From the IMG/VR virus record IMGVR_UViG_3300033997_000478, positions 62,001 through 126,000 of that record: a stretch of DNA of 64,000 bases, one strand, 5' to 3'. This document shows positions 523-64,000 of this stretch, one piece after another; the stretch's first letter is position 1; every line of letters starts with the position of its first letter. The notes beneath the pieces were generated by a model. That model ran no database searches and was not told the DNA's origin. It worked only from the letters and a program-made list of their open reading frames with translations. The position numbers and the translations under genes were made by a program.

Positions 523-586
523 CGCGACCTCCTAAAAAATCTTAGACACATACTATCATGGGGAGAGTACTCCTGGTAGAATTGTA

Positions 587-1168
587 ATGCACAAAACCAA
601 ATCGCCGAATTACCAGCGTTGGGTCATGATGGTGCGCAGATGCACCAATCCCCAAGACCCCTCATACGGAAACTACGGTGCACGTGGTATTCGAGTTTGC
701 GAAAGGTGGATGTCTTTCGAGAACTTCGACGCCGACATGGGATTGCCACCAACGCCCGATCATTCGATCGAACGTCTTGACGTCAACGGCCATTATGAGC
801 CGAACAATTGTTGTTGGGCCACTCCCCAGGAACAAGCAAGAAATCGCAGAAGTAACGTTCTGCATGAGCATGACGGGGAGAAACACTTCCTCGATGATCT
901 GGCTGATAAGAACAACATCCCTAAGCGCACCGTGATCGATAGGATGCGTCGAAAGGGAATGAGTTTGTCCGAAGCACTGACAATGCCGAGGATGCGCGAA
1001 GACGTCTACATTGAAGTGGACGGCGTAAAGGTGAAAAGGGCTGATCTCTTGCGTAACGCCAAGATTTCCATACCCACTTTCAACAAACGACTCAGTCAAG
1101 GAATGTCGGTCGAAGAGGCACTGAAGGCGCCCGTCGTTAGGGGTCGCCCGCGTAAAACACCTAAGTAG
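587..1168 (+). CDS. Free-standing HNH homing endonuclease
   Basis: W..M..RC...Y..YGARGIRVCERW, SIERLDVNGHYEPNNCCWAT..EQ..N; C-terminal R...GMS.EEAL DNA-binding repeats; lower GC than flanking genes. Confidence 0.88.
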   Translation: MHKTKSPNYQRWVMMVRRCTNPQDPSYGNYGARGIRVCERWMSFENFDADMGLPPTPDHSIERLDVNGHYEPNNCCWATPQEQARNRRSNVLHEHDGEKHFLDDLADKNNIPKRTVIDRMRRKGMSLSEALTMPRMREDVYIEVDGVKVKRADLLRNAKISIPTFNKRLSQGMSVEEALKAPVVRGRPRKTPK

Positions 1169-28713: not shown

Positions 28714-29856
28714 CTACGGCGAGAAGAAGGGAATGATGGTGCGCGGGGGCATCGGCTCACCACTGGTGTTGGTCACCGGCTGATTGATCGGCTGCTGGGT
28801 CGTGGCTTGACTGCCGCCCTTGACCGCAGCGTAGTCTTCCTTGGACATCCACCACTGCAACTCGTTCTGCTGATCCATGTCAATGCGCGGATAGCCGTGG
28901 TAGTTCAGTGCCACCAGTTCGGTGCGCGGGATCTTGACCATGGCCTGTTCGCGACGACCATCGGCCATGTCCGGGTTGAAGATCTCAACCACGTCATTGA
29001 ATTCCTGCATGATGATCGGATCTTGGTACATCGCACCGATGGCTTGGAACGGCACCGAGATCTGGCTGGCACGATCCTGCATGAACGGAGTATCCGAGGC
29101 GAAGTCAAACGCCTGACCCAGCGCGCTGGACATGGGCCAAGCCACACCGCACGCTGCGATCTTCTGCACGTAGGAGCGGGTGGGGTCCAAGATCAATCGG
29201 TAGATGCGCGTTTGGTAATCGATCTCACGCAGCATCTCACTGTCCGGGTACGGCAGCATCTTGCCTTGATACACCAGCGACATGTAGATGCGCCAGGCCT
29301 CAAGGAGTAAAGATATGGGGTCACCGGAAATATTGCGGAAGCTGGCGTTGAGCGTGTACTCGTGGTAGATGGTGTCAATGCCATCGACCATACCCCACGT
29401 CTCCTTGGCCAGACCTGCATCAGCGATGTAGTTCTCAGTGACCGGATCGGGCCAGCCGTTGAGGCTGATCAGATTGTTGGTCAACCACGGGATGAAAGCG
29501 CACTTCGGATCGACCAGTGGGAAACGGGTGTTGTGACCGTCAGCGACGATCTTGGCCACCTCAGGATCCAACCACTGACGCACCGCCTCATGGTAGTGCG
29601 TACGCGCTCGACCTTTACCTGCACCCAGCAGCGACATGCGGCGGTCGGCGGTGAGGTTATTGTATGACAAATTTAGGCGCGGCCGAGTGAAAAAAGTCAG
29701 GCCCTGATTGTCTTGGTTATACGGTACGGGGTTGCCCACACCGCGATGGTTAATGCCAACTGTGATGTTGGCAAAGGCTTCGCTCAGGCTACCAAGACCG
29801 CTGCCTCGCGACAGGTAGTCGATGGATTCGCCCAGCACATTGTCGTTATCACTCAT
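28714..29856 (-). CDS. Virion structural protein, tail-tube-like fold candidate (phiKZ gp88-like)
   Basis: GLTFFTRP.LNL, YQTRIYRLILD, ACGVAWP.S; synteny. Confidence 0.7.
   Translation of the reverse strand: MSDNDNVLGESIDYLSRGSGLGSLSEAFANITVGINHRGVGNPVPYNQDNQGLTFFTRPRLNLSYNNLTADRRMSLLGAGKGRARTHYHEAVRQWLDPEVAKIVADGHNTRFPLVDPKCAFIPWLTNNLISLNGWPDPVTENYIADAGLAKETWGMVDGIDTIYHEYTLNASFRNISGDPISLLLEAWRIYMSLVYQGKMLPYPDSEMLREIDYQTRIYRLILDPTRSYVQKIAACGVAWPMSSALGQAFDFASDTPFMQDRASQISVPFQAIGAMYQDPIIMQEFNDVVEIFNPDMADGRREQAMVKIPRTELVALNYHGYPRIDMDQQNELQWWMSKEDYAAVKGGSQATTQQPINQPVTNTSGEPMPPRTIIPFFSP
29663..29666 (+). promoter_or_regulatory. Possible late (nvRNAP) promoter TATG for the gp89/gp90-like operon
   Basis: AT-rich TTGTATG patch embedded in an antisense gene, as at 35153 (AATTGTATG); phiKZ late promoters are TATG. 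Confidence 0.35.
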
Positions 29857-29885
29857 GTGTGCATCTCAGCTAGGAACTACGAAAA

Positions 29886-31100
29886 ATGATTACCACCGTT
29901 GCAACCAAAGCGGGCATTGCGGGAGCCTTGACGGTTATCGCAACAGTCGCAAAGAAGCTGCTCAACATGCAGAAGAACGATTCGTTGGTGAGCTTCACCA
30001 AGGTTCTTCGCGTGGAGCCGGTCACGATGATCGACGAGCGGCTGAAGAACTACGACAACCTGCCGGACATCCTGCAGACGCTGCTGACCCTGTTCTGCGG
30101 CTACTACCTGCAAGCGGTGGCCTGCATGACCAATGTCGGCCAGATCAATGTCGTGCGCATGCTCGACACGCTGAACCCGAACCGCGACGGTGGCATGGCA
30201 GCTTCATCGTTGGTGGATGCCATCAACGGCAAGGCATCGCCCTCGATGCTGTCCATGGAATCGTTCGGCACCCATCTACCTGATCCAGTCGTGAGCATGG
30301 AATCCCCGCAAGACGTGGGCCGTGCTGTGGACTCGGCAATGTCCGGCGTTCGCGCCGCTGTGTCTGCGCATCGTCCGGCCATGGACAAGAACATGTACGG
30401 CTCGCTGTCCACCGGCGGGGTTGATCTGAGTCGCGGCATCAAGGCCGCTTCGGAAGCCGTCAACCTGGCCGTGGGCAAGCTGCTGGAAGTGCCGATCATC
30501 GGCGAGAACGGCCAGAAGGCTACCTTCCCGATCTCGGTCCGTCTGGCAACCATGACGGTCAATCCGGACGTCCTCACTCATATCCTTGGGACTTCGGGTA
30601 GCGACAATTCCTACCGCGAGCGCATCCATCGCTGGCGTGCTGGTGAGCTGTCGCTCGTGCAAGATCTGATCCTGTGCCGGGACATGATCCTGGCAGACAA
30701 GCGCCTGATGGCCAAGGACACTTCCGGCGCCATGAGCGAGATCGCTCGCCGCCGCGCAGCCAACACTGCGTCGGCCTTCACCACCGGCACCCCGTCGGTC
30801 GGTTCGGCCAGTGGTCTGGTGGTCCTGTCCAAGGACACCGCCGTCCAGCTCGAACGTTCGCGTCTGGGCCGCCTGGACGACCCGCAGTTCCGTGATGCGG
30901 TCTTCGCCGACTCGCTGAACATGATCATGGTCGTTGTCGACCAAGACCGTGATCTGGTCACCATCTACACCCGTGACATCGCACTGCCGGTCAAGCTGTC
31001 GGTGCGTGAGATCAAGTCGGGTAACTCCGGCAAGGGCGGTGGCTTTGACATCAACGAGATCATGAAAGCCTACCGCCTGGGCAACAGCGCGGTCTTCTAA
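29886..31100 (+). CDS. Inner-body/internal head protein (phiKZ gp89-like)
   Basis: SL..FT...RVEP..MID motif; internal LSME/VSME processing sites; synteny. Confidence 0.75.
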   Translation: MITTVATKAGIAGALTVIATVAKKLLNMQKNDSLVSFTKVLRVEPVTMIDERLKNYDNLPDILQTLLTLFCGYYLQAVACMTNVGQINVVRMLDTLNPNRDGGMAASSLVDAINGKASPSMLSMESFGTHLPDPVVSMESPQDVGRAVDSAMSGVRAAVSAHRPAMDKNMYGSLSTGGVDLSRGIKAASEAVNLAVGKLLEVPIIGENGQKATFPISVRLATMTVNPDVLTHILGTSGSDNSYRERIHRWRAGELSLVQDLILCRDMILADKRLMAKDTSGAMSEIARRRAANTASAFTTGTPSVGSASGLVVLSKDTAVQLERSRLGRLDDPQFRDAVFADSLNMIMVVVDQDRDLVTIYTRDIALPVKLSVREIKSGNSGKGGGFDINEIMKAYRLGNSAVF

Positions 31101-55802: not shown

Positions 55803-56402
55803 ATGCCCCAAGGCCGTGATCTGATCGTTCGACAGGTTGCTGGAGTCGGCAGCCGGGAAACACCCGAAGAGATCAAGCCGCTGTTTTTGGACATCTTTGA
55901 ATGTCTGACCGATGACAACTACCAACTCACCAGTGGCGATGCACAAGGGCCCGACGAATGGGCCCACGAAGGAGCCATGCGTTCGTCTAACTATGGCTTG
56001 ATCGGTGCGAACATCTTCCTTCCGTGGAATGGCGTTCGTCGCCACGATGGTACCTACCGTTATGAGGACGGCAAGGTTTTCTTTGACGCCTCCAAGTTTG
56101 AGAACTGGGAACGTGCCGGCGAGATCTCTCTTGCTGCGCGCGGTTCATGGGAGGGTTTGGGTCGTGGTGGGATTGCCTTGCACACTCGCAATGCCTACCA
56201 AGTCCTCTCGCGCTCACTGGAGAAGCCTGTCAAACAGATCGTTTGCTGGGCCTTGCCGGTAGGTAAGAAAGGCCGGGTTAGGGGTGGTACCAACACTGCT
56301 CATCAGATTGGTTTGGACTACAATGTCCCAATCATCAACCTTGCCACCGAAGAAGGCATGCAGCGGGCGATGGACTATTTGCGACGTAAGGGAAGGCGCT
56401 GA
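55803..56402 (+). CDS. DprA/Smf-like Rossmann (SLOG superfamily) protein
   Basis: AGVGSR.TP, .SG.A.G.D.....GA, I.LPW.G, ..RN..Q.L, GGT..A...A...N.P..NL. Confidence 0.75.
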   Translation: MPQGRDLIVRQVAGVGSRETPEEIKPLFLDIFECLTDDNYQLTSGDAQGPDEWAHEGAMRSSNYGLIGANIFLPWNGVRRHDGTYRYEDGKVFFDASKFENWERAGEISLAARGSWEGLGRGGIALHTRNAYQVLSRSLEKPVKQIVCWALPVGKKGRVRGGTNTAHQIGLDYNVPIINLATEEGMQRAMDYLRRKGRR

Positions 56403-56581
56403 TGATTGCCTGGATAGATCGGGTCATCAATGAGACTCATGGCAGGCATTGGGCCGTGCTCTTTATCACCGGCCATGGCTTTCCCTTGTATTGGCTGATA
56501 CGTCATCCGCTCATTGCCTTCAGTGTTTATCAGCTGGCAATGTTTCGAATGAAGGAGTACCAAGGACGTGAACCTGACTGA
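56402..56581 (+). CDS. Small hydrophobic protein (59 aa)
   Basis: TGATG-coupled ATG; MIAWIDRVINETHGRHWAVLFITGHGFPLYWLIRHPLIAFSVYQLAMF...; below the track cutoff. Confidence 0.55.
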   Translation: MIAWIDRVINETHGRHWAVLFITGHGFPLYWLIRHPLIAFSVYQLAMFRMKEYQGREPD

Positions 56582-56918
56582 GAAGAGCCTCAAAGAAGCC
56601 TACTACCAGCGACTGCTGTCGCGGTTCTGGCTGTCGGTGCTGTTGGTGACCCTACTGGGGGTAGGGATTATCTCGAGCGTCTATACCGCCTTTACCCATC
56701 CGGAGTTCTTCATCCGACCCGGCGGGATTGCAATCGTTCTGGCGTGGACGCTACTCACCGGAATCGTTGCACTGTTCCACGGCAACAATAACCGATCTAT
56801 CCACGCGCTGGAGAACTACTTCGGTTATCAAGGGGATCGTGCCAAAGCACGACACGAGCACTTCTGCACCAACCTCCTGCACTGCGCCATGGTGCATAAC
56901 AGGATTGACGAGGAGTAA
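56568..56918 (+). CDS. Two-TM membrane protein
   Basis: Hydrophobic FWLSVLLVTLLGVGIISSVY and GGIAIVLAWTLLTGIVALF. Confidence 0.7.
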   Translation: MNLTEKSLKEAYYQRLLSRFWLSVLLVTLLGVGIISSVYTAFTHPEFFIRPGGIAIVLAWTLLTGIVALFHGNNNRSIHALENYFGYQGDRAKARHEHFCTNLLHCAMVHNRIDEE

Positions 56919-56925
56919 ATAGGGG

Positions 56926-57189
56926 ATGGGGATGGAAAAGATTGAAGAATCTGAGTACAAATATCGCACGGCCTATCTGATAGCGTTTGTCTTTGTACTA
57001 GCCATGACGCTGATTGATCTGGCCCTGTTGATCTGTGGTCTCAGGGGATGGGTGGAGATCTCTCTACTCACGGCGGGTAAGTTGTTTGTCTGCCTGCTCG
57101 TACTGGTGGTGGTCACTCGCCTGGTGTGGGAGTTCTACGATGCTCAGCGTGAAGCCTACCAACAGTTCAGGAGCCAGACCGATGCTTAA
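56926..57189 (+). CDS. Two-TM membrane protein
   Basis: AYLIAFVFVLAMTLIDLALLICGL and LFVCLLVLVVV. Confidence 0.7.
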   Translation: MGMEKIEESEYKYRTAYLIAFVFVLAMTLIDLALLICGLRGWVEISLLTAGKLFVCLLVLVVVTRLVWEFYDAQREAYQQFRSQTDA

Positions 57190-57421
57190 GCGTATCGCCG
57201 CCAGTGCTGCCCAAATCATCATCTGGGCCATGATGCTCGCCGTTTCAATTGCCATGGTCTGGGTGGCGTGTTGGGTCCGCCAAGCTGCACCGGAACTCAA
57301 GGACCAAGCCTACCTGACGGCAATCACCGCCGTGGCGATCGCCTTTGTCTGGATCATCGGACTGAGCACGATCAAGCGGCTCCGGTTCTACGACAGCCTC
57401 AAGGCTAAGGGAAGCGCATGA
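57182..57421 (+). CDS. Two-TM membrane protein
   Basis: ATG 57182 (MLKRIAASAAQIIIWAMMLAVSIAMVWVACW...). Confidence 0.7.
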   Translation: MLKRIAASAAQIIIWAMMLAVSIAMVWVACWVRQAAPELKDQAYLTAITAVAIAFVWIIGLSTIKRLRFYDSLKAKGSA

Positions 57422-57723
57422 AGGGCATGGGCAACTACACGCACCAGTCGCTGGTGTATGCAAGCGTCCACCGGGCGTGTGCGAGCGCTCGCACTGCCTG
57501 GCGCACCACGCTGCTGATAGCTTTGGTCTACGCAGGGATTACGATCCCGATGATCATCGCCAAGCCCGAGCGCACGCTGTGGACCTTCGTGGTCCCAACC
57601 CTGATCGCCCTCGTGTTCGGCGTTCTGGCATACGTCTTCTATCGACGTATGGTGCGTGCCCAACAGCAGCTGGACCATCTCACCGAGTCCTCCGGCATCG
57701 GACGACTGTGGGACGATCTGTAA
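57418..57723 (+). CDS. Two-TM membrane protein
   Basis: LLIALVYAGITIPMII and LWTFVVPTLIALVFGVLAYVF. Confidence 0.7.
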   Translation: MKGMGNYTHQSLVYASVHRACASARTAWRTTLLIALVYAGITIPMIIAKPERTLWTFVVPTLIALVFGVLAYVFYRRMVRAQQQLDHLTESSGIGRLWDDL

Positions 57724-57782
57724 CCGCATAGGGACGGCTGCGGCCGTCTCTTATGCCCTCAAAACACAACAGGAATGAAATC

Positions 57783-58544
57783 ATGGCACGCTACAAGAAA
57801 CGCACCTACGAAATCCACAGCAACGGAACGGTGGAGACGTTCACCGACGAGGACAAAGTGTTGTCCTTCCTGCTCAACAGGGCACGCGACGTCACGGCTC
57901 TGTACGTCATCACTGGTGGTGGGCGACGTGTCTTGAGTCCTCTGACTAAGGAACTCAACAAGCCGCTGGACCTGTACAAGTTCCGCCACTGGATGTGGAT
58001 GTATCAGGACCGGATCAAGGGTATCTCTCCAGACACGGCCCGTCGCATGGGTATTCAACAGTACCTGCGCGGTCGTGCGGCACCGCTGGATCACAGCGTG
58101 CGTGCTACCCGCGATGAACTCAAGTTCAAACGCGAACTGGCCGATCTCAAGTACGCCCACAAGAAGTTGGCCGAGGACAACGACCGCCTGCGCGCTGAAA
58201 ACAAGCAGACTCAGAGTCTGCTGAACGAAGCAATGAAACTGCACATCAAGCACTGGATGGTTGAGCAGAACGGCGGCCCTATCGCCAGTGACCAGTACCG
58301 TTTTGCCACGCTCTGGTTGCCACAGCCTGCCGTATTCAAGAGCGTAGCTGACGTACTGGCCTCCATGCACTATTTTGGTACGTCCGGTAAAGATGCTGTG
58401 CGTGATGTGTGGGATCGCAAATATAAGAAAGAGCCCAACTCCACCAGCCTCTATATCGCCGAGCTCAACGGTGACAAACTCACTCTGTGGTGGCAGGGCA
58501 ACTACGACGCACTGCGCTACCGCATCTCCAAATTTACCAGGTGA
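57783..58544 (+). CDS. Hypothetical protein with central coiled coil
   Basis: AGGA RBS, ATG 57783 (MARYKKRTYE). Confidence 0.8.
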   Translation: MARYKKRTYEIHSNGTVETFTDEDKVLSFLLNRARDVTALYVITGGGRRVLSPLTKELNKPLDLYKFRHWMWMYQDRIKGISPDTARRMGIQQYLRGRAAPLDHSVRATRDELKFKRELADLKYAHKKLAEDNDRLRAENKQTQSLLNEAMKLHIKHWMVEQNGGPIASDQYRFATLWLPQPAVFKSVADVLASMHYFGTSGKDAVRDVWDRKYKKEPNSTSLYIAELNGDKLTLWWQGNYDALRYRISKFTR

Positions 58545-58548
58545 AGAA

Positions 58549-59226
58549 ATGAAGAACAAAGACCTTACCGGTCGGCAGTTCGGTAAGCTTACGGTTCTTC
58601 GTGCAGATGGAGCTCGAGCGCGCCGGGACTACCGAGAGGTTTTGTGGCTGTGCCGCTGTGACTGCGGCGTGGAAAAGACCATCGGTAGTCGAGCCCTCCT
58701 TCACAAGGTCCACGGCAGTAAGTCGTGCGGTTGCGTGAGGAGCCAGAAGCTCGTCGCTGCCGCCTACAGTACCAAACACGGGCTCAAACAACACCGACTA
58801 TACCCGATCTGGAAAACGATGCGTATGCGGTGCAACAACCCGAATAACCATAAGTACGCCAACTATGGCGGTCGGGGAATTCGGGTCTGTGAACGCTGGT
58901 CAGACTTTAAGACCTTCTTGGATGACATGGGCCCATCATTTACAGAGGGTTTGAGTCTGGATCGCATTGACGTCAACGGGCATTACGAACCGGGTAATTG
59001 CCGCTGGGCGACTTACAAGGTCCAAGCCAATAATCGTGAAAGGTCGGGACGCCTCCAAGTTGTCGTCAAGGTTCCGGACACCTTGGACGATTCAGACCTC
59101 TCGAATTGGATGGATGTGGCTGAGGTGGTCAAAGTTCTCCAACCCATCCAGAAGCAACACGACAGCCCTTTCAAGTTTTATCGCCGCATCACATCAACCG
59201 ACGTTATCTACAGCCTGGAGCTTTAA
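58549..59226 (+). CDS. Free-standing HNH homing endonuclease
   Basis: DLTGRQFGKLTV, WLCRCDCG, SCGC, LYPIWKTMRMRC, YGGRGIRVCERW, SLDRIDVNGHYEPGNCRWAT. Confidence 0.9.
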   Translation: MKNKDLTGRQFGKLTVLRADGARARRDYREVLWLCRCDCGVEKTIGSRALLHKVHGSKSCGCVRSQKLVAAAYSTKHGLKQHRLYPIWKTMRMRCNNPNNHKYANYGGRGIRVCERWSDFKTFLDDMGPSFTEGLSLDRIDVNGHYEPGNCRWATYKVQANNRERSGRLQVVVKVPDTLDDSDLSNWMDVAEVVKVLQPIQKQHDSPFKFYRRITSTDVIYSLEL

Positions 59227-60696
59227 GTGAAGCAATATCTCGATCTTCTGCGTGACGTTCGCGAGAATGCACGTTACAAGCTGGACCGCACCAAGGTCGG
59301 CTGCTACTCAGTCTTCGGTCGACAGGTGAGGTTCAATCTTGCCGATGGTTTTCCGATGTGCACCACCAAGAAGCTGCACCTGCGTTCGATCATCCACGAG
59401 CTGCTGTGGTTCCTCAAGGGTGACACCAACATCGGTTACCTCAAGAGCCTGGGCGTGCGCATCTGGGACGAATGGGCCTCAGCGTCGGGAGATTTGGGGC
59501 CGATCTATGGGTTCGGCTGGCGGTACGCGCCCGTCGAAAATCCCAAGCATCTGGTCCAAGTTGCGATTCGCTCCGACCAAGATGCCGACTACGTGGAACA
59601 GATCCCCGCGTTCCAACCGCCCATCAAGTGCGATCTCAACAATGAACGCATGTGGGCCATCGAAGACCTGGGTGCAGACGGCGGGAACACCCGCTACAAG
59701 GTCCAGTTCGCCTCTGGTTTCATTGGTGAGATCTCGCGTCCGAACTGGCGTGCATTGACCGACTACGATGTGGTCGATGGTTACGCACGTACAGTGTGCG
59801 GTGTCGGCTATCTCGGTAATCCGGTCCTCAAGCACGACCGCCTGTACGCTCTTTGGCGTAACATGTTGGCCCGCTGCTACGACCCCGCACACCCCAGCTA
59901 TCCGTCGTATGGCGGTGCGGGCATCACTGTCTCGCCGATCTGGCATAGCTACGAGCAGTTCGTTCGCACGACAACGCGGCTACCGCTGTACGCACTGTGG
60001 AATATCCATCCGGGTAACTACGACCTGGACAAGGATTACTACGGAAGCGGCGTGTACTCGCCTAGCACCTGTGTGTTCATCCCACAGGAACTCAATGCCG
60101 CTCTCCCGAAGGACGGTATCGCGCTGGCCGTCAAGGGGCAGCTCTTTGCGAACTGGGAGGCCTTCGCGCGCCACAACCGTATTCGCCCGGATTACATCAA
60201 GGCTCGAATCTCTGAGGGGCATAAGTGCGGCGAATTCCACCCGGACGATTTTGAAGAAGTTCGTCCGAAGGAAGGGTTCTTGTATCGACAGAAGTTCTAC
60301 GTCGACCAGATCGCTGATGCCATCCATACGCTGCGAACGTCCCCGGCTTCCCGTCGGATCATCGTCAACGCCTGGCTACCGTCACTGATCGCAGACCAAG
60401 CACTTACCCCGTGTCATGCCATGTTCCAGTTCTACGCTGAAGAGCTGACCCTGCAAGAGCGCGCCACCCTGTACATCGCCAAGCAGTACCCGGAAGGCAT
60501 CAGTGCGGCGCAGTACAACGCTGACCACCTGCTGGGTCTGGTCAAGATCTACGAGGAAGAATCCAAGCTCACCTTCCATGGCGAGTACGGTGCTGCTGGC
60601 CAGCCGGAATTGGAACAGCGACTGGAAATGATCGAAGTGATCCTCGAAGAGCACAAGATCCCGAAGCATCGCCTGTCCTGCCAGCTCTACCAGCGT
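59227..60696 (+). CDS. thyA: Thymidylate synthase exon 1, with in-frame HNH-like insertion
   Basis: DRT.VG, TTKKL, ELLWFL.G, IWDEW, LGPIYG, SRRII, PCH, YQR; ends CGT at the intron 5' splice site. Confidence 0.93.
59527..60300 (+). mobile_element. HNH-type endonuclease domain (~258 aa) inserted in frame in ThyA
   Basis: [12 protein letters not shown]...[10 protein letters not shown]...W, LDKD....[14 protein letters not shown] between [10 protein letters not shown] and VDQI. Confidence 0.8.
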
Positions 60697-60799
60697 AAAC
60701 AACACTGCGCCATTGCAGCGTGAGCTGCATTGAAACACATTCCTTAAAGCAATACATGTCCAGGAAGTAGTGTTCCGGGGCAATGACAGGAGAATTAAT

Positions 60800-61387
60800 T
60801 TGAGCGAACCACCGTCTGAACCAGAGGAATTCTGGAAAAGAGTCGAGAAATTCAAAAGACTAGAAGTCTCCAATCTGGGTGGTGCGCGAACGGTGTGGCC
60901 GCACAAGGTTAAGGTTCTTCAGCCGATGAAGGCACCTTCCAGTAAGGATCATTACCTGAAAATTTCAGTTAGTCCTTCGGAAGGAGGTAAACAAAAACAG
61001 GTCATGATCCACACCCTCGTTGCTGAAGCTTTCATTGATCGACCATCGGGTATTGTCGATATGGAAGTCAACCACAAGGATGGGGTAAAGACGAACAATG
61101 TTGCGACGAATCTCGAATGGACAACCCACCAAGGGAATATCCAACATTCGTTCGAAAGCGGATTGAGGGCGGCGTGTGTCGGTGAACTTCATCCACAGGC
61201 GAAATCCGTCCGGGCTATAAATGTGATGGACGGCGAAATTATCGCTGCCGGGACCGTTGACGAGTTGGCTCAGAAACTGGGCGTCGAAAGATCCTTCATT
61301 CGAAGGAGATTAAATGGAACCGTCACATCCATAAATCCTAAATTGCCTTACCGAATCGAAGGTCTGGGAAAGGGCAACACTACCTGA
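60800..61387 (+). CDS. Intron-encoded NUMOD4-HNH homing endonuclease (P2 loop)
   Basis: EVSNLG..R, IHTLVAEAFI, VNHKDGVKTNNVATNLEWTT...N..H; AGGAGA RBS before TTG 60800 (GTG 60770 alternative). Confidence 0.9.
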   Translation: MSEPPSEPEEFWKRVEKFKRLEVSNLGGARTVWPHKVKVLQPMKAPSSKDHYLKISVSPSEGGKQKQVMIHTLVAEAFIDRPSGIVDMEVNHKDGVKTNNVATNLEWTTHQGNIQHSFESGLRAACVGELHPQAKSVRAINVMDGEIIAAGTVDELAQKLGVERSFIRRRLNGTVTSINPKLPYRIEGLGKGNTT

Positions 61388-61530
61388 GCTAAATCAGTGT
61401 CCTCACCCAAAGGAATGTGTAAACCTCTCTAAAACGGGAAACTCTCGACTGAGACAATCCGTTGCTAAATCGAAACAACCTGAATAAAGACCTACACTAT
61501 CCTCAGGCTAGTAATCAGAGGAGAATTGTG

Positions 61531-62307
61531 ATGACAATTGCCGCCTATATCCTGACTGACCCCATCTCTGGGTTCGAGTACTACGGCAGCAGTGAAAATG
61601 TGGAAGTACGTCTTGATCGACACTTCCGCGACCTTCAAGCCAACCAACACCACAACAGTAGACTGCAGGAGCTGTACAACGCAGGTCGTGTGTTGGACAA
61701 GATCATCTTTGAAAGTAGTACAATCGAAGATGCCCGTGAAACCGAACTGGCGTTTATCAATTCCCACCAAGGTAGCTGGAGAATGATGAACATTGGTCTT
61801 GGCGTTAACGGGGGCGATAATCTCTCGAACCATCCAGAGCGGGAACGCATCATTTCGAAGATTTCTGAGTCCGTCCGAACGAGAATGGCTCAAATGTCAC
61901 CGGAAGATCGCAAGGAAAAGTGGGGACGCCCAGGCGCCAGCAACCCCATGTTCGGTAGGACCCACTCTGAAGAGGTCCGCCTTGCAAGTTCCAAGCTTCA
62001 TCGGGGGAACACCCACGCTCTGGGAAACGAATGGTCCCCTGAAGCTAGGGCAAAGTTGTCGAAAATAGCTTCCGAACGGACAGGAGACAAAAATCCTTTC
62101 TTCGGTAAGACGCATTCGGCAGAGAGTCGCGAAAAAATAAGGCAGGCCAAACTCGGCGGGGGACCGCCGACGAATGCCATGAAGGTAATGGTCAAGGGTA
62201 TCGTTTACAATTCTGTCAAAGATGCTTGCGATGGTGTCGGGATCTCGTATCCGACCATGGCTAAGCGTCTGAAAAGTGACGACCCCGATTATTCATTTGT
62301 CTCGTAA
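61531..62307 (+). CDS. Intron-encoded GIY-YIG homing endonuclease with NUMOD3 repeats (P6 region)
   Basis: AAYIL...YYGSS....R...H, GGD, NPMFGRTHSEE, NPFFGKTHSAESREKI; GAGGAG RBS. Confidence 0.9.
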   Translation: MTIAAYILTDPISGFEYYGSSENVEVRLDRHFRDLQANQHHNSRLQELYNAGRVLDKIIFESSTIEDARETELAFINSHQGSWRMMNIGLGVNGGDNLSNHPERERIISKISESVRTRMAQMSPEDRKEKWGRPGASNPMFGRTHSEEVRLASSKLHRGNTHALGNEWSPEARAKLSKIASERTGDKNPFFGKTHSAESREKIRQAKLGGGPPTNAMKVMVKGIVYNSVKDACDGVGISYPTMAKRLKSDDPDYSFVS

Positions 62308-62501
62308 AGGCCTAACGACTATCCAAAGTACCCTAGGACTAAAAGGGTAACGAGTAGAGTAGACTCCAAGTGGAGTCGAAAAGAGAGGGGTCTCCAAGGA
62401 AGGAGATCGTGATATAGTCTAAACTGCATGGTGACATGTAGCTGTCAAGCTTGAAGAACTTGACGGGTTAGGAGTAACGATCCTAACTGAAGGTCGGCAT
62501 G

Positions 62502-62798
62502 AGCGCCGACATCTTCCTTGGCGTACCGTTCAACATCGCCAGCTACGCGCTGCTGACGCACATGGTGGCCCACGTGGTGGGCATGGCGCCGGGCGACTTC
62601 GTCCACACCTTCGGTGACCTGCACGTCTACTCCAACCACATCGACCAGATCGAGTTGCAGATGACCCGTGACCCGCTGCCGCTGCCCAAGCTGCTGCTCA
62701 ACCCGGACGTGAAGAACATTGACGACTTCACCTTCGATGACATCCGTGTGGTCGGCTACGAGTCGCATCCGGCCATCAAGGGCGACGTGGCGGTCTGA
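62502..62798 (+). CDS. thyA: Thymidylate synthase exon 2
   Basis: [29 protein letters not shown]...IDDF, Y.SHPAIK..VAV; spliced product 588 aa. Confidence 0.95.
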
Positions 62799-62800
62799 TC

Positions 62801-62908
62801 ATGTCTCACACTGGATTCTTCATCCTCTGCGGGTTTGTCATCCTCTGCCACGTTGGACTGTGCTTGGCACTCCACTTGGAGTACCGGAAGTACTACCGGA
62901 AGTGGTGA
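62801..62908 (+). CDS. Small single-TM peptide (35 aa)
   Basis: MSHTGFFILCGFVILCHVGLCLALHLEYRKYYRKW*; 2 nt after the thyA stop. Confidence 0.5.
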   Translation: MSHTGFFILCGFVILCHVGLCLALHLEYRKYYRKW

Positions 62909-62921
62909 AGTACAGACATAA

Positions 62922-62942
62922 TCCCCTCCCGATTGGGAGGGG
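62922..62942 (+). terminator. Intrinsic terminator hairpin
   Basis: CCCCTCCC-GATT-GGGAGGGG. Confidence 0.6.
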
Positions 62943-62954
62943 ACAGGAGGGCAC

Positions 62955-63149
62955 ATGCAACATGTCTTGGCAACACGAGCGAGCGGATCGCAGTTCCCCG
63001 TTCGTATCTACGACCAGCAGGTTACCGACCACGGCGTCAAGGTGACCCTACCTGCCTCTACGATGGAAACGCTGAAGCGTGAGAACGCAACCATCACACT
63101 GCGCATCCATGCCGTGGAGCAAACCACACACCGACTCATTGGGGGCTGA
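62955..63149 (+). CDS. Hypothetical protein (64 aa)
   Basis: AGGAGG RBS. Confidence 0.6.
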   Translation: MQHVLATRASGSQFPVRIYDQQVTDHGVKVTLPASTMETLKRENATITLRIHAVEQTTHRLIGG

Positions 63150-63200
63150 CATGGCCGAGCTCGAAAAGCGCCTACCCTCCACCGCAACTGGAACCGAACA

Positions 63201-63794
63201 ATGACCTGTCCCGAACACACGATCGCTCTCAAGCAGAGCTACCTCGCCTGGCTCAAGGATGCCAACATCGATCGGCAGCTGAACCAGGATCCGCACACCG
63301 TCAACACGCTCCAGCACATGTTGCCGGTACTGGAATGGATCCACACCAACCTGAAGCGCCAGGACATGGCCGCCAGCTTCTCCGGTGAGACGCACGATGT
63401 CGCCCTCGAGCACTACCGGACGTTCGTGCTGGACATGGGTCGTCAGGGTGGTAACGCCATGCTGGCGCAGCTGCTCTGCAACGAAGATACCCTGCTCTTC
63501 GACGCAACCGATTACAGCGACCTCGTCGGGTACCGCGTCCAAGGTATTCCGGCCATCGATGAAAGCATCTACGCCCACCTGAAGAAAGCCAAGGTCGTCA
63601 AGAACGACGCCGCCGCCTTCATGGCCGAGCTGGACACCAACAAGTACGTGACTGTGGTCATCTACGGAACTCGTTCGCTGTCGCGATTCATTGGCGAAGG
63701 TACGGCGAAAGAGTACACCACGCGCAGCTTCCGCGACACGCTGTTCTATTCGCCCAATCGCGAGAACCTCAAGCACGTCCTGATCATCGGGTAA
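63201..63794 (+). CDS. Hypothetical protein
   Basis: 197 aa, host-type codon usage. Confidence 0.8.
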   Translation: MTCPEHTIALKQSYLAWLKDANIDRQLNQDPHTVNTLQHMLPVLEWIHTNLKRQDMAASFSGETHDVALEHYRTFVLDMGRQGGNAMLAQLLCNEDTLLFDATDYSDLVGYRVQGIPAIDESIYAHLKKAKVVKNDAAAFMAELDTNKYVTVVIYGTRSLSRFIGEGTAKEYTTRSFRDTLFYSPNRENLKHVLIIG

Positions 63795-63800
63795 CCGGCG

Positions 63801-63980
63801 ATGTTCGGCCATTTCAACAACATGTCCCACTTCGAGTACGAGTTCTGGAAGTTCCAGATGACTGCGTTGGCGATGGGGTTCATCCTCCTCGTCCTCTTGA
63901 TTGTCTGGATCATCGACTCGTGCACGAAATGGTGTCGCAAGCGCGGCGCACGCTGGCGTCGTAAACAACCACGGAGATAA
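63801..63980 (+). CDS. Small single-TM protein with basic tail (59 aa)
   Basis: MFGHF...ALAMGFILLVLLIVWII...RKRGARWRRKQPRR*. Confidence 0.6.
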   Translation: MFGHFNNMSHFEYEFWKFQMTALAMGFILLVLLIVWIIDSCTKWCRKRGARWRRKQPRR

Positions 63981-64000
63981 TCATGGCTGACTTTTGGGCT

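What the first reader, a model, noticed from the sequence alone, without database searches (positions are those of the whole stretch)
59527..60300. Thymidylate synthase carrying an HNH nuclease domain in frame with no intein or intron signals
Seen: between [10 protein letters not shown] and VDQI, where bacterial ThyA has about 10 residues, there are about 258 aa. They contain [12 protein letters not shown]...YGGAGITV...W...LDKD...[12 protein letters not shown] (core 59842-60096), clearly related to the free HNH gene just upstream (LYPIWKTMRMRC...YGGRGIRV..W). There is no C/S start, no HN end and no group I core, so the insert should stay in the mature protein. Established: this loop tolerates inserts in eukaryotic TS. 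Inference: a homing endonuclease colonising an essential gene as a permanent protein fusion (splicing-free homing), or a domesticated DNA-binding or nuclease module coupling dTMP synthesis to DNA.
Basis: partly seen in the sequence, partly recalled or inferred. Interest (0 to 1): 0.8.

Follow-up and report, generated by a model that had tools for sequence, protein, structure and literature searches.

The report
Homing-endonuclease module nested inside thymidylate synthase
A jumbo phage's only thymidylate synthase carries, in frame in a surface loop, a folded 258-residue module of a phage homing-endonuclease family with no intein or intron to remove it; over a hundred other phage thymidylate synthase clusters carry it too, which points to selfish DNA that spreads without splicing.

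Summary
Window 59527-60300 is a 258-codon in-frame insert in thyA, where plain ThyA has about 10 residues.

- **What it resembles.** Its best family match is PHROG 2081 (E 1.6e-34). It is related to the free-standing gene just upstream (hhalign 97%).
- **It is translated.** Against a relative, 39 changed codons are synonymous and 6 are not. In the other two frames the counts are 4/41 and 3/40.
- **No route for removal found.** There are no intein signatures, no Hint fold and no group I core. The true group I intron downstream in the same gene is detected by the same search.
- **Predicted structure.** AlphaFold models the insert as a compact domain (pLDDT 93). The surrounding TS fold stays intact (TM 0.97 to E. 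coli TS).
- **It is widespread.** Of the 150 best 50%-identity clusters, 103 carry the module, at two different thyA sites.
- **Insert and host enzyme have separate histories.** Their pairwise identities are uncorrelated (R2 0.01). Near-identical enzymes carry different module subtypes.
- **The "HNH" label is unproven.** A Lys sits where I place the catalytic His (LDKD...N), and no HNH signature or convincing structural match was found. PHROG 2081 proteins are, however, reported inside phage group I introns.

Best reading: a homing-endonuclease-type module that invaded thyA and stays in the mature enzyme. Whether it still cuts DNA or has been domesticated is open. I found no paper describing it. 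The closest published parallel is an in-frame endonuclease insert in an actinophage methylase.

The parts
59227..60696 (+). thyA exon 1 (490 codons; the ORF reads on into the intron to a stop at 60721-60723)
   Evidence: Pfam PF00303 E 1.4e-55. Collinear with the intron-less 588-aa relatives P0002/P0003. Contigs with an intron-less thyA join 60695/60696 to 62502.
59527..60300 (+). In-frame 258-codon insert: homing-endonuclease-type module nested in the ThyA loop after the W-R motif
   Evidence: PHROG 2081 E 1.6e-34. Homologous insert at the same site in many ThyAs. 39 synonymous against 6 nonsynonymous codon changes in this frame only. AF2 pLDDT 93.3, pTM 0.85.
59527..59646 (+). N-terminal adaptor of the insert (aa 1-40, strand at aa 9-13), specific to ThyA-embedded copies
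   Evidence: Conserved among embedded copies. Free-standing homologs start matching the insert profile only at about position 32 or later. DSSP strand E9-13.
59647..59787 (+). Small beta-rich domain of the module (aa 41-87)
   Evidence: DSSP strands 42-51, 54-61 and 66-70. Only weak SH3/Tudor-like structural matches, Z 2.5-3.5. Present in free-standing homologs.
59818..60102 (+). Conserved core (aa 98-192), from the W..R-C-Y motif to a beta-beta-alpha unit with D168-K169-D170 (60028-60036) and N190 (60094-60096)
   Evidence: Invariant or near-invariant columns. hhalign 97% to the upstream gene. Beta 165-168, beta 183-186, helix 187-191. PacI Z 4.2 only. No HNH_3 profile match.
60109..60264 (+). 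Helix-turn-helix DNA-binding unit of the NUMOD / I-TevI / I-HmuI kind (aa 195-246)
   Evidence: VIA matches: 8b6e Z 5.0, I-TevI DNA-binding domain Z 3.9, I-HmuI C-terminus Z 3.9. Foldseek top hit is the I-TevI DNA-binding domain. The same segment of homologs P0025/P0026 passes Pfam PF22083 I-HmuI_NUMOD-like.
60265..60300 (+). C-terminal adaptor strand of the insert (aa 247-258, conserved Arg254) leading back into the ThyA helix that starts at DQI
   Evidence: R254 is nearly invariant in full-length embedded copies and absent from 120 of 134 free-standing homologs. DSSP strand 251-255.
60445..60696 (+). Second, unrelated ThyA insert (84 aa, helical) between the FQFY and RLSCQL motifs
   Evidence: Pfam profile gap 161-169. 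Shared in varied form by insert-less phage ThyAs. Lower pLDDT, 54-72. No PHROG hit.
60697..62501 (+). td-like group I intron (1805 nt) splitting thyA at YQR|SAD
   Evidence: Absent from relatives L004/L005/L006. Rfam Intron_gpI partial hits at 61419-61480 (E 0.004) and 62290-62441 (E 0.018) flank the GIY-YIG ORF. Contig joints 60695/60696 to 62502.
60770..61387 (+). Intron ORF 1: canonical HNH_3 homing endonuclease
   Evidence: Pfam HNH_3 E 7e-07, PHROG 59 E 1e-36. Metagenome contigs show an intron form lacking it (joint 60734 to 61422).
61462..62307 (+). Intron ORF 2: GIY-YIG / NUMOD3 / I-TevI-like homing endonuclease
   Evidence: Pfam GIY-YIG, NUMOD3 and I-TevI_DNA-bd. PHROG 314. A variant with a 588-nt internal deletion exists.
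62502..62798 (+). thyA exon 2 (98 codons plus stop)
   Evidence: Pfam PF00303 positions 169-266, E 7e-40. Exon 1 plus exon 2 gives 588 aa, the length of the intron-less relatives.
58549..59226 (+). Free-standing relative of the module (LDRID...NN version) directly upstream of thyA
   Evidence: PHROG 374 E 6e-62. hhalign 97% to the insert family. It occupies the place of an unrelated 141-aa gene in relatives, and it abuts a 180-nt stretch of thyA that differs at 47-48 positions.

Best explanation
A complete homing-endonuclease-type module sits in frame in the variable surface loop of ThyA, just after the W-R motif and before the DQI helix. The module has a small beta domain, a conserved core with a beta-beta-alpha unit carrying D-K-D...N, and a NUMOD/I-TevI-like helix-turn-helix.

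It is translated as part of ThyA and is not removed. It has no protein-splicing or RNA-splicing apparatus. Two ThyA-specific adaptor segments are modelled as strands (aa 9-13 and 251-255); I infer that they bring its ends together. The TS fold, and presumably TS activity, is kept.

The module entered thyA the way free-standing homing endonuclease genes enter conserved genes. It has moved or been replaced repeatedly among phage thyA genes. This is splicing-free colonisation of an essential gene, with the endonuclease made as an internal domain of the enzyme whose gene it occupies.

Shown here: in-frame translation under selection, absence of splicing signatures, a folded-domain prediction, a wide and patchy distribution, two insertion sites, and decoupled histories.

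Inferred: retention in the mature protein, DNA cleavage of empty thyA alleles, and present-day mobility.
For: **Translated and selected**
- 39 synonymous against 6 nonsynonymous codon changes versus L004 in the thyA frame; 4/41 and 3/40 in the other frames.
- TS catalytic residues are invariant in 26 insert-bearing ThyAs.
- This is the phage's only ThyA, and there is no ThyX.

**No splicing apparatus**
- No Pfam or NCBIfam intein hit.
- No conserved Cys/Ser/Thr or His-Asn at the junctions.
- No Hint fold by Foldseek or VIA.
- No group I hit in 59480-60340, while the real intron downstream is detected.
- No hidden out-of-frame ORF with a family hit.

**Structure**
- Insert pLDDT 93.3, pTM 0.85.
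- Full-length relative pLDDT 90.4, pTM 0.86.
- Its TS part superposes on E. coli TS with TM 0.97 over 264 residues.

**Homing-endonuclease kinship**
- PHROG 2081 E 1.6e-34. PHROG 2081 proteins are reported as ORFs inside DNA-polymerase group I introns of Bastillevirinae (PMC11878797).
- PF22083 I-HmuI_NUMOD-like is found in the homologous inserts P0025/P0026.
- Hundreds of free-standing phage homologs exist, some annotated as HNH, HTH or AP2 proteins.

**Mobility**
- 103 of the top 150 representative clusters carry the module: 87 at the window's site, 6 at a second site, 10 unclear.
- Presence/absence needs 27 changes on the enzyme tree, and at least 6 are forced by well-supported branches.
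- Insert and enzyme identities are uncorrelated (R2 0.01, 6515 pairs).
- P0011 and P0054 have enzymes about 71% identical but inserts 28% identical and of different subtypes.
- The same thyA is also hit by a free-standing relative and by a two-endonuclease intron, each bordered by a diverged tract of thyA, as co-conversion would leave.
Against: - No RNA or protein data: the public runs gave only DNA-like contigs.
- Nuclease activity is unproven. Lys replaces the canonical general-base His, no HNH profile matches, and structural matches to solved nucleases are weak.
- The AU test rejects a single origin only marginally (p 0.041), and the enzyme tree is poorly resolved.
- Inserts are on average more diverged than the enzymes (29% against 47% identity), and no near-identical insert was seen in divergent enzymes. 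Recent homing is therefore not shown.
- The closest insert-less relative of the window's ThyA shares only about 59% identity over the matched stretches.
- The representative list was ranked with the insert in the query, so it is enriched for insert-bearers.
Confidence: 0.65

Rival explanations
1. Domesticated module. The insert descends from a homing endonuclease but no longer moves or cuts. It is kept because it gives ThyA a DNA- or RNA-binding function, for example tethering dTMP synthesis to replicating DNA or regulating thyA expression.
For: - Strong purifying selection.
- ThyA-specific, conserved adaptor segments and Arg254, absent from free-standing homologs.
- High pTM of the whole protein, which suggests a defined packing against TS.
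- Inserts are older-looking than a recently spreading element (mean identity 29%).
- The catalytic-type motif is less conserved in embedded copies than in free-standing ones: 73-87% against 94-98%.
- No canonical His.
Against: - Insert and enzyme histories are decoupled.
- There are two insertion sites and two subtypes at one site.
- Many close ThyA relatives do without the insert.
- D-K-D...N is still kept in most embedded copies, including this one.
- A domesticated function would be expected to track the enzyme tree.
Confidence: 0.2
2. The insert is removed after all, by an unrecognised kind of protein splicing, by site-specific proteolysis, or by an unrecognised RNA-level mechanism. Mature ThyA would then be of ordinary size.
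For: - Non-canonical inteins and unclassified in-frame insertions keep being found in phages (bioRxiv 10.1101/2025.01.02.630785; PMC11855218).
- No experimental data here exclude removal.
Against: - No Hint fold, no nucleophile at either junction, and no intein or intron model hit.
- The module is homologous over most of its length to free-standing proteins that have no splicing parts.
- The TS fold is predicted complete with the insert in place.
Confidence: 0.05
3. Decaying passenger. A dead remnant of a past invasion is merely tolerated in a permissive loop and is on its way to loss.
For: - Some embedded copies have lost motif residues or whole sub-domains, for example the 212-aa versions P0015/P0016 and N-truncated forms.
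- The loop tolerates unrelated inserts.
Against: - The window's copy is under clear purifying selection (39:6).
- It keeps all conserved residues.
- It is predicted to fold with very high confidence.
Confidence: 0.08

Closest known systems
In-frame endonuclease insert and ShiLan domain in actinophage DNA methylases (Gosselin et al. 2023, PMC9957025; Arsenault et al. 2025, PMC11855218)
   Same: Both are insertions in a phage enzyme gene that read through in frame and have no detectable intein or intron. Both have conserved insertion sites. Both have a patchy distribution and element and host-gene histories that do not correlate.
   Different: - There the host is a non-essential methylase, and the elements are a LAGLIDADG domain or a frame-shifted hidden HNH.
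- Here the host is the phage's only thymidylate synthase.
- Here the endonuclease-type module is itself in the host frame. It belongs to another family (PHROG 2081) and has dedicated adaptor strands.
- Here it is found in over a hundred 50%-identity clusters at two sites.
Intron-encoded and free-standing PHROG 2081 proteins of phages (for example in Bastillevirinae DNA polymerase group I introns, PMC11878797)
   Same: Same protein family by profile (E 1.6e-34). Same core motifs and NUMOD-like DNA-binding tail. InterPro finds no HNH signature in those proteins either.
   Different: Those are separate ORFs in intron loops or between genes. The window's copy has no start or stop of its own and is an internal domain of ThyA.
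Inteins with HNH endonuclease domains
   Same: An in-frame endonuclease-bearing insert at a conserved site of an essential nucleotide-metabolism or replication gene.
   Different: No Hint splicing domain, no junction nucleophiles and no terminal His-Asn, so excision is not expected.
T4 td / Bacillus phage thyA group I introns with I-TevI / I-BmoI-type endonucleases
   Same: Same host gene. This very gene also has such an intron, at 60697-62501, with an I-TevI-like GIY-YIG ORF.
   Different: The finding's insert lies about 130 codons upstream in plain-ThyA terms. It has no ribozyme core and is coding throughout in the thyA frame.
Lineage-specific ThyA loop inserts (eukaryotic TS insert after the W-R motif; Lactobacillus casei small-domain insert; recalled from established TS structural literature)
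   Same: The same permissive surface region of the TS fold. Unrelated 30-95 aa inserts occur there in other phage ThyAs.
   Different: Those are short structural elaborations of 8-50 aa with no independent fold or mobile-element kinship.

Membership tests
Intein | Hint-fold splicing domain (blocks A, B, F, G) | tested here: not met
   No Pfam or NCBIfam intein model hit at E up to 0.1. No Hint or intein structure among Foldseek PDB matches or 48,161 VIA-aligned chains.
Intein | Cys/Ser/Thr at intein position 1 and at +1 of the C-extein, with terminal (His-)Asn | tested here: not met
   The N-junction reads WRY|APV. The C-junction reads KFY|VDQ. The family alignment shows no conserved nucleophile or Asn at either junction.
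Group I intron | Conserved ribozyme core (P3-P9) detectable by covariance model | tested here: not met
   cmscan of 59480-60340 at E up to 10 gives no Intron_gpI hit. The same search finds both core halves of the real intron at 61419-61480 and 62290-62441.
Group I intron | Sequence not constrained as host-frame coding across both boundaries | tested here: not met
   258 codons are open in the thyA frame in all homologs. Codon changes are 39 synonymous against 6 nonsynonymous in that frame only.
HNH / His-Me finger nuclease | Beta-beta-alpha metal-finger topology | tested here: inconclusive
   The AF2 model has beta 165-168, beta 183-186 and helix 187-191. The best solved His-Me match is PacI at Z 4.2, below the level the tool calls meaningful. 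Model coordinates could not be inspected.
HNH / His-Me finger nuclease | General-base His at the end of the first strand | tested here: not met
   By manual comparison with the HNH_3 consensus (recalled), the corresponding position is Lys169 (LDKD). It is Lys in 97% of 134 free-standing and 86% of 113 embedded homologs, and Arg in the upstream gene's LDRID.
HNH / His-Me finger nuclease | Metal-ligand Asn/His on the helix and an acidic ligand before the base | tested here: inconclusive
   D168 and N190 are conserved: 98% and 94% in free-standing homologs, 87% and 73% in embedded ones. Their role is inferred from position only.
HNH / His-Me finger nuclease | Match to curated HNH profiles | tested here: not met
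   No Pfam or NCBIfam HNH hit. hhalign against the canonical HNH_3 protein of the same window aligns only the helix-turn-helix tail, probability 7%. InterPro finds no HNH signature in PHROG 2081 intron proteins (PMC11878797).
Homing endonuclease (functional class) | Family members encoded in self-splicing introns or free-standing next to conserved genes | tested here: met
   PHROG 2081 is the best match and is reported in Bastillevirinae DNA polymerase group I introns. Hundreds of free-standing phage homologs exist. Six copies are in this genome, one abutting thyA.
Homing endonuclease (functional class) | Modular DNA-binding tail of the NUMOD / I-TevI / I-HmuI kind | tested here: met
   PF22083 passes its threshold in the homologous inserts P0025/P0026. 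The window's own tail gives only weak structural matches to the I-TevI and I-HmuI DNA-binding domains, Z 3.9.
Homing endonuclease (functional class) | Patchy distribution and history decoupled from the host gene | tested here: met
   27 changes on the enzyme tree, at least 6 forced. AU p 0.041. R2 0.01 between insert and enzyme identities. Two sites and two subtypes. Caveat: the tree is weakly resolved and the sampling is biased.
Homing endonuclease (functional class) | Site-specific cleavage of the empty allele and biased inheritance | not testable with these tools
   Needs enzyme assays and phage crosses.
Thymidylate synthase ThyA | Complete TS fold and catalytic residues (Cys of PCH, Arg pair of SRR, R-S-x-D, Asn of FNIASY, His/Tyr of HxY) | tested here: met
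   Pfam PF00303 on both exons. Catalytic columns are invariant or near-invariant in 26 insert-bearers. Model TM 0.97 to E. coli TS.

The most novel reading that the evidence does not exclude
A large, undescribed class of splicing-free homing elements. The endonuclease has given up its own gene, intron or intein, and is made as an internal domain of the essential enzyme whose gene it targets. It cuts empty thyA alleles of co-infecting phages, possibly as a pair on the obligate ThyA dimer. Its beta-beta-alpha active site is non-canonical, with Lys in place of the HNH histidine.
Probability: 0.3. Interest if true: 0.85.

Novelty: new variant of a known kind. Interest (0 to 1): 0.72.

Why it matters
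Homing endonucleases are thought to survive in essential genes only by hiding in self-splicing introns or inteins, or by sitting between genes. A third strategy has so far been reported, computationally, only for a dispensable actinophage methylase: staying in the protein as a tolerated nested domain.

Here that strategy appears in the sole thymidylate synthase of a jumbo phage, and in over a hundred sequence clusters of phage ThyA. These include cultured Escherichia (Asteriusvirus UE-S1), Klebsiella and Bacillus phages, so it can be tested directly.

If the module is active, three things follow:
- It defines a new route of selfish-gene spread.
- It defines a new nuclease active-site variant.
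- It is a natural example of an enzyme with a programmable-looking DNA-targeting domain inserted in a loop.

If the module is domesticated, it links dTMP synthesis physically to DNA. Either way, automatic annotation currently calls these proteins plain "thymidylate synthase".

Tried and rejected
- **Rfam over 56000-64000 at E up to 1.** Nothing found. Only short-range rescans found the real intron's core halves, and none lay in the insert.
- **PDB sequence search with the insert profile.** No hit at E up to 10.
- **Foldseek against PDB.** Nothing significant; mostly spurious kinase matches.
- **VIA wide search.** Only sub-threshold matches.
- **hhalign against the canonical HNH_3 ORF.** No core match.
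- **Hidden out-of-frame endonuclease, as in the ShiLan domain.** Alternative-frame ORFs 59768-60385 (+), 59482-59946 (-) and 59983-60327 (-) have no PHROG hit and show no coding constraint.
- **Public sequencing runs.** The "RNA" runs behaved like DNA. They mostly held conserved thyA pieces of other organisms, so there is no evidence on splicing of the insert.
- **Recent presence/absence polymorphism.** All close relatives (P0001-P0004) carry the insert. The nearest insert-less ThyA is about 59% identical.
- **Module inserted in other host enzymes.** The longer hits were free-standing multi-domain or tandem proteins.
- **Literature.** Five full-text searches found no description of a ThyA with this insert.
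- **hmmalign placement of the insertion site.** It was ambiguous between profile positions 83 and 105. I replaced it with motif-based and domain-coordinate mapping.
Full report
**Setting.** The window is bases 62001-126000 of a 324-kb phage record with terminal repeats. The ORF 59227-60723 (498 aa) matches Pfam Thymidylat_synt in two pieces. A third piece lies in a separate ORF at 62499-62798.

Aligned with insert-less ThyAs, the stretch between the [10 protein letters not shown] motif and V-D-Q-I is 258 codons, 59527-60300. Plain enzymes have about ten residues there. The insert has no Pfam or NCBIfam hit. It matches PHROG 2081, labelled "HNH endonuclease", at E 1.6e-34 over residues 81-230, and four related PHROGs. 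Its relation to the free-standing gene just upstream (58549-59226, PHROG 374) is real: BLASTP E 3e-11, and hhalign probability 97% over 78 columns.

**It is translated in the thyA frame.**
- Against the closely related contig L004, the insert has 46 base differences. In the thyA frame, 39 changed codons are synonymous and 6 are not. In the other two frames the counts are 4/41 and 3/40.
- Against L006, all 7 differences are synonymous.
- Alternative-frame ORFs in the region have no family hit. This is unlike the ShiLan element of actinophage methylases, where the endonuclease is hidden out of frame (PMC11855218).

**Nothing suggests removal.**
- No intein model matches.
- The junctions (WRY|APV and KFY|VDQ) carry no conserved Cys/Ser/Thr or His-Asn across 26 aligned homologs.
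- No Hint or intein structure appears among Foldseek or VIA matches of a very confident model.
- A covariance-model scan of 59480-60340 at a lax threshold finds no group I signal.
- Equally lax short-range scans find both core halves of a group I intron at 61419-61480 (E 0.004) and 62290-62441 (E 0.018), on either side of the GIY-YIG ORF. This serves as a positive control.

**Structure.**
- With the family alignment, AlphaFold2 models the insert alone at pLDDT 93.3 and pTM 0.85.
- It models the intron-less 588-aa relative P0002, whose insert is about 99% identical, at pLDDT 90.4 and pTM 0.86.
- The TS part of that model superposes on E. coli TS with TM 0.97 over all 264 residues. The enzyme fold is thus predicted intact around the insert.
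- The insert has five parts: an N-terminal strand (aa 9-13); a small beta domain (aa 42-70); a helical core ending in a beta-beta-alpha unit (aa 165-191); a helix-turn-helix (aa 195-246); and a C-terminal strand (aa 251-255).
- The first roughly 35 and last roughly 15 residues are conserved among ThyA-embedded copies but absent from free-standing homologs. I read them as adaptors that bring the two ends together. This is an inference, because coordinates could not be inspected.

**What the module is.**
- Structure searches against viral, AlphaFold DB and ESM Atlas libraries return other 550-aa "thymidylate synthases" first. Next come many free-standing phage proteins of 170-300 aa named HNH endonuclease, HTH homing endonuclease, I-HmuI-like NUMOD-like or AP2-domain protein.
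- A profile search finds 381 such proteins. tblastn finds the module in 541 cultured-phage records.
- The C-terminal helix-turn-helix of the homologous inserts P0025/P0026 passes Pfam PF22083, I-HmuI_NUMOD-like. The window's own tail gives weak matches to the I-TevI and I-HmuI DNA-binding domains.
- PHROG 2081 proteins are reported as ORFs inside DNA polymerase group I introns of Bastillevirinae. There too, InterPro sees only DNA-binding signatures and no HNH signature (PMC11878797).
- Kinship with homing endonucleases is therefore well supported by context. The HNH assignment is not.
- By my manual comparison with the HNH_3 consensus, the general-base His position holds Lys (L-D-K-D ... N). 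This holds in 97% of 134 free-standing and 86% of 113 embedded homologs, and the upstream gene has Arg.
- hhalign to the canonical HNH_3 ORF of the same window aligns only the helix-turn-helix tail.
- The best solved His-Me match is PacI at Z 4.2, below what the tool calls meaningful.
- The near-invariance of D168, K169, D170 and N190 argues for a functional site. Its chemistry is unknown.

**It is widespread.**
- A word-indexed search with the insert found 31 proteins (90%-identity cluster representatives) with a homologous insert, nearly all annotated ThyA. Among them are a Lysinibacillus chromosome and a 907-kb contig. In Lysinibacillus the gene sits beside RNR, DHFR and a serine recombinase, which I read as prophage-like.
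- An exhaustive HMMER search of 1.84 billion 50%-identity representatives with P0002 listed 150 best clusters. Of these, 103 carry the module.
- 87 have it at the window's site, after the W-R motif. Six have a shorter version at a second site about 15 residues upstream, before the L-G-P-x-Y-G motif. Ten are unclear.
- Cultured carriers include Escherichia phage UE-S1 (Asteriusvirus, 517-aa ThyA), Klebsiella phage KP13-7 and Bacillus phage 015DV002 (564 aa).
- All are annotated simply as thymidylate synthase. Five full-text searches found no description of the insert.

**Evidence for mobility.**
- On a tree built from 219 enzyme-only columns, presence/absence of the module needs 27 changes. At least 6 are forced by well-supported branches.
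- The window's clade (P0001-P0004) is sister to the insert-less P0056/P0088.
- On a 75-row subset, the best tree holding all insert-bearers together is 115 log-likelihood units worse. The AU p is 0.041, which is only marginal.
- Across 6515 pairs, insert identity and enzyme identity are uncorrelated (R2 0.01).
- P0011 and P0054 have enzymes about 71% identical, but their inserts are 28% identical and of two architectural subtypes at the same site.
- P0007 and P0008 show the opposite pattern. Insert and adjoining enzyme sequence are 85-97% identical, and the gene ends 43-64%. That is what a conversion tract would leave, but TS termini are variable anyway.
- Caveats: the tree is poorly resolved, the list was ranked with the insert in the query, and inserts are on average more diverged than enzymes (29% against 47%). 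No recent transfer was caught.

**Context in this phage.**
- The upstream free-standing relative takes the place of an unrelated 141-aa gene in relatives. It abuts 180 nt of thyA that differ at 47-48 positions from L004/L006, while the following 180 nt differ at 0-4 positions.
- The 1805-nt intron (60697-62501, at Y-Q-R|S-A-D) is absent from relatives. It is followed by exon sequence only 88% identical.
- Metagenome contigs show intron forms without the HNH_3 ORF, and forms with a 588-nt deletion in the GIY-YIG ORF.
- The genome holds five further free-standing relatives of the module.
- It has no second ThyA and no ThyX.
- thyA here is a hot spot for four endonuclease-type elements, three of them using known lifestyles.

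**Interpretation.** The best-supported reading is that a free-standing homing-endonuclease-type gene became an in-frame nested domain of ThyA at a permissive loop. It is retained in the mature enzyme, and it has been gained, replaced or lost many times among phage thyA genes. The data cannot decide whether the present copy still cleaves empty thyA alleles or has been domesticated as a DNA-binding appendage. Purifying selection and motif conservation fit both readings. The decoupled histories favour the first, and the ThyA-specific adaptors and deep divergence favour the second. Cryptic removal is unlikely but untested.

**Comparison with what is known.** The closest published case is the methylase family of actinophages. 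It carries an in-frame LAGLIDADG endonuclease domain without an intein, as well as the ShiLan domain, and both were analysed by the same kind of distribution and incongruence arguments (PMC9957025, PMC11855218). The present case differs in four ways: the host gene is essential, the endonuclease family is different, the module is itself in the host frame, and the scale is much larger. I therefore class it as a new variant of a known, and still barely documented, kind.

Noticed in passing
window 60697-62501: thyA is split at YQR|SAD by a td-like group I intron of 1805 nt. It carries two homing-endonuclease ORFs: HNH_3 at 60770-61387 and GIY-YIG/NUMOD3/I-TevI-like at 61462-62307. Rfam misses it in a whole-region scan. 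Short-range scans find the two core halves flanking the GIY-YIG ORF. Close relatives lack the intron.
   Followed up: partly
window 60734-61422 and 61548-62137: Metagenome contigs hold intron variants without the HNH_3 ORF (687 nt missing) and with a 588-nt deletion inside the GIY-YIG ORF. This suggests stepwise gain and decay of the two endonuclease genes.
   Followed up: no
window 58549-59406: The free-standing relative of the module replaces an unrelated 141-aa gene found in relatives. It borders a 180-nt tract at the thyA 5' end that differs at 47-48 positions, against 0-4 in the next 180 nt. That looks like a co-conversion tract from homing of the upstream gene.
   Followed up: partly
window 62514-62899: Exon 2, and sequence just past the thyA stop, is only 88% identical to L004/L005, while 56001-58552 further upstream is 95% identical. 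The protein differs from P0002 mainly near the splice site (YQRSADIF against MQRSGDEF). This fits co-conversion with the intron, or target-site divergence in intron-less relatives.
   Followed up: no
window 60445-60696: A second in-frame ThyA insert of 84 aa lies between the FQFY and RLSCQL motifs. It is helical, has lower model confidence and has no family hit. Variable versions (roughly 30-75 aa) occur in many phage ThyAs with or without the module, and P0001 carries a different version from P0002.
   Followed up: partly
window 536-889; G000 29753-29893, 222538-223044, 304764-305117: Four further free-standing relatives of the module are in the same phage genome, besides the gene upstream of thyA.
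   Followed up: no
proteins P0056, P0068, P0071, P0079, P0102, P0124, P0142, P0160: Many phage ThyA representatives of 400-490 aa lack the module but carry other unexplained inserts of 60-115 aa around the same small-domain region. ThyA seems to be an unusually insertion-tolerant or insertion-prone enzyme in phages.
   Followed up: no
L011 1931-3484 (Escherichia phage UE-S1); L012 1964-3658 (Bacillus phage 015DV002): Cultured, laboratory-tractable phages encode module-bearing ThyAs of 517 and 564 aa, annotated simply as thymidylate synthase. The UE-S1 copy keeps LDKD...N but has altered upstream core motifs.
   Followed up: partly
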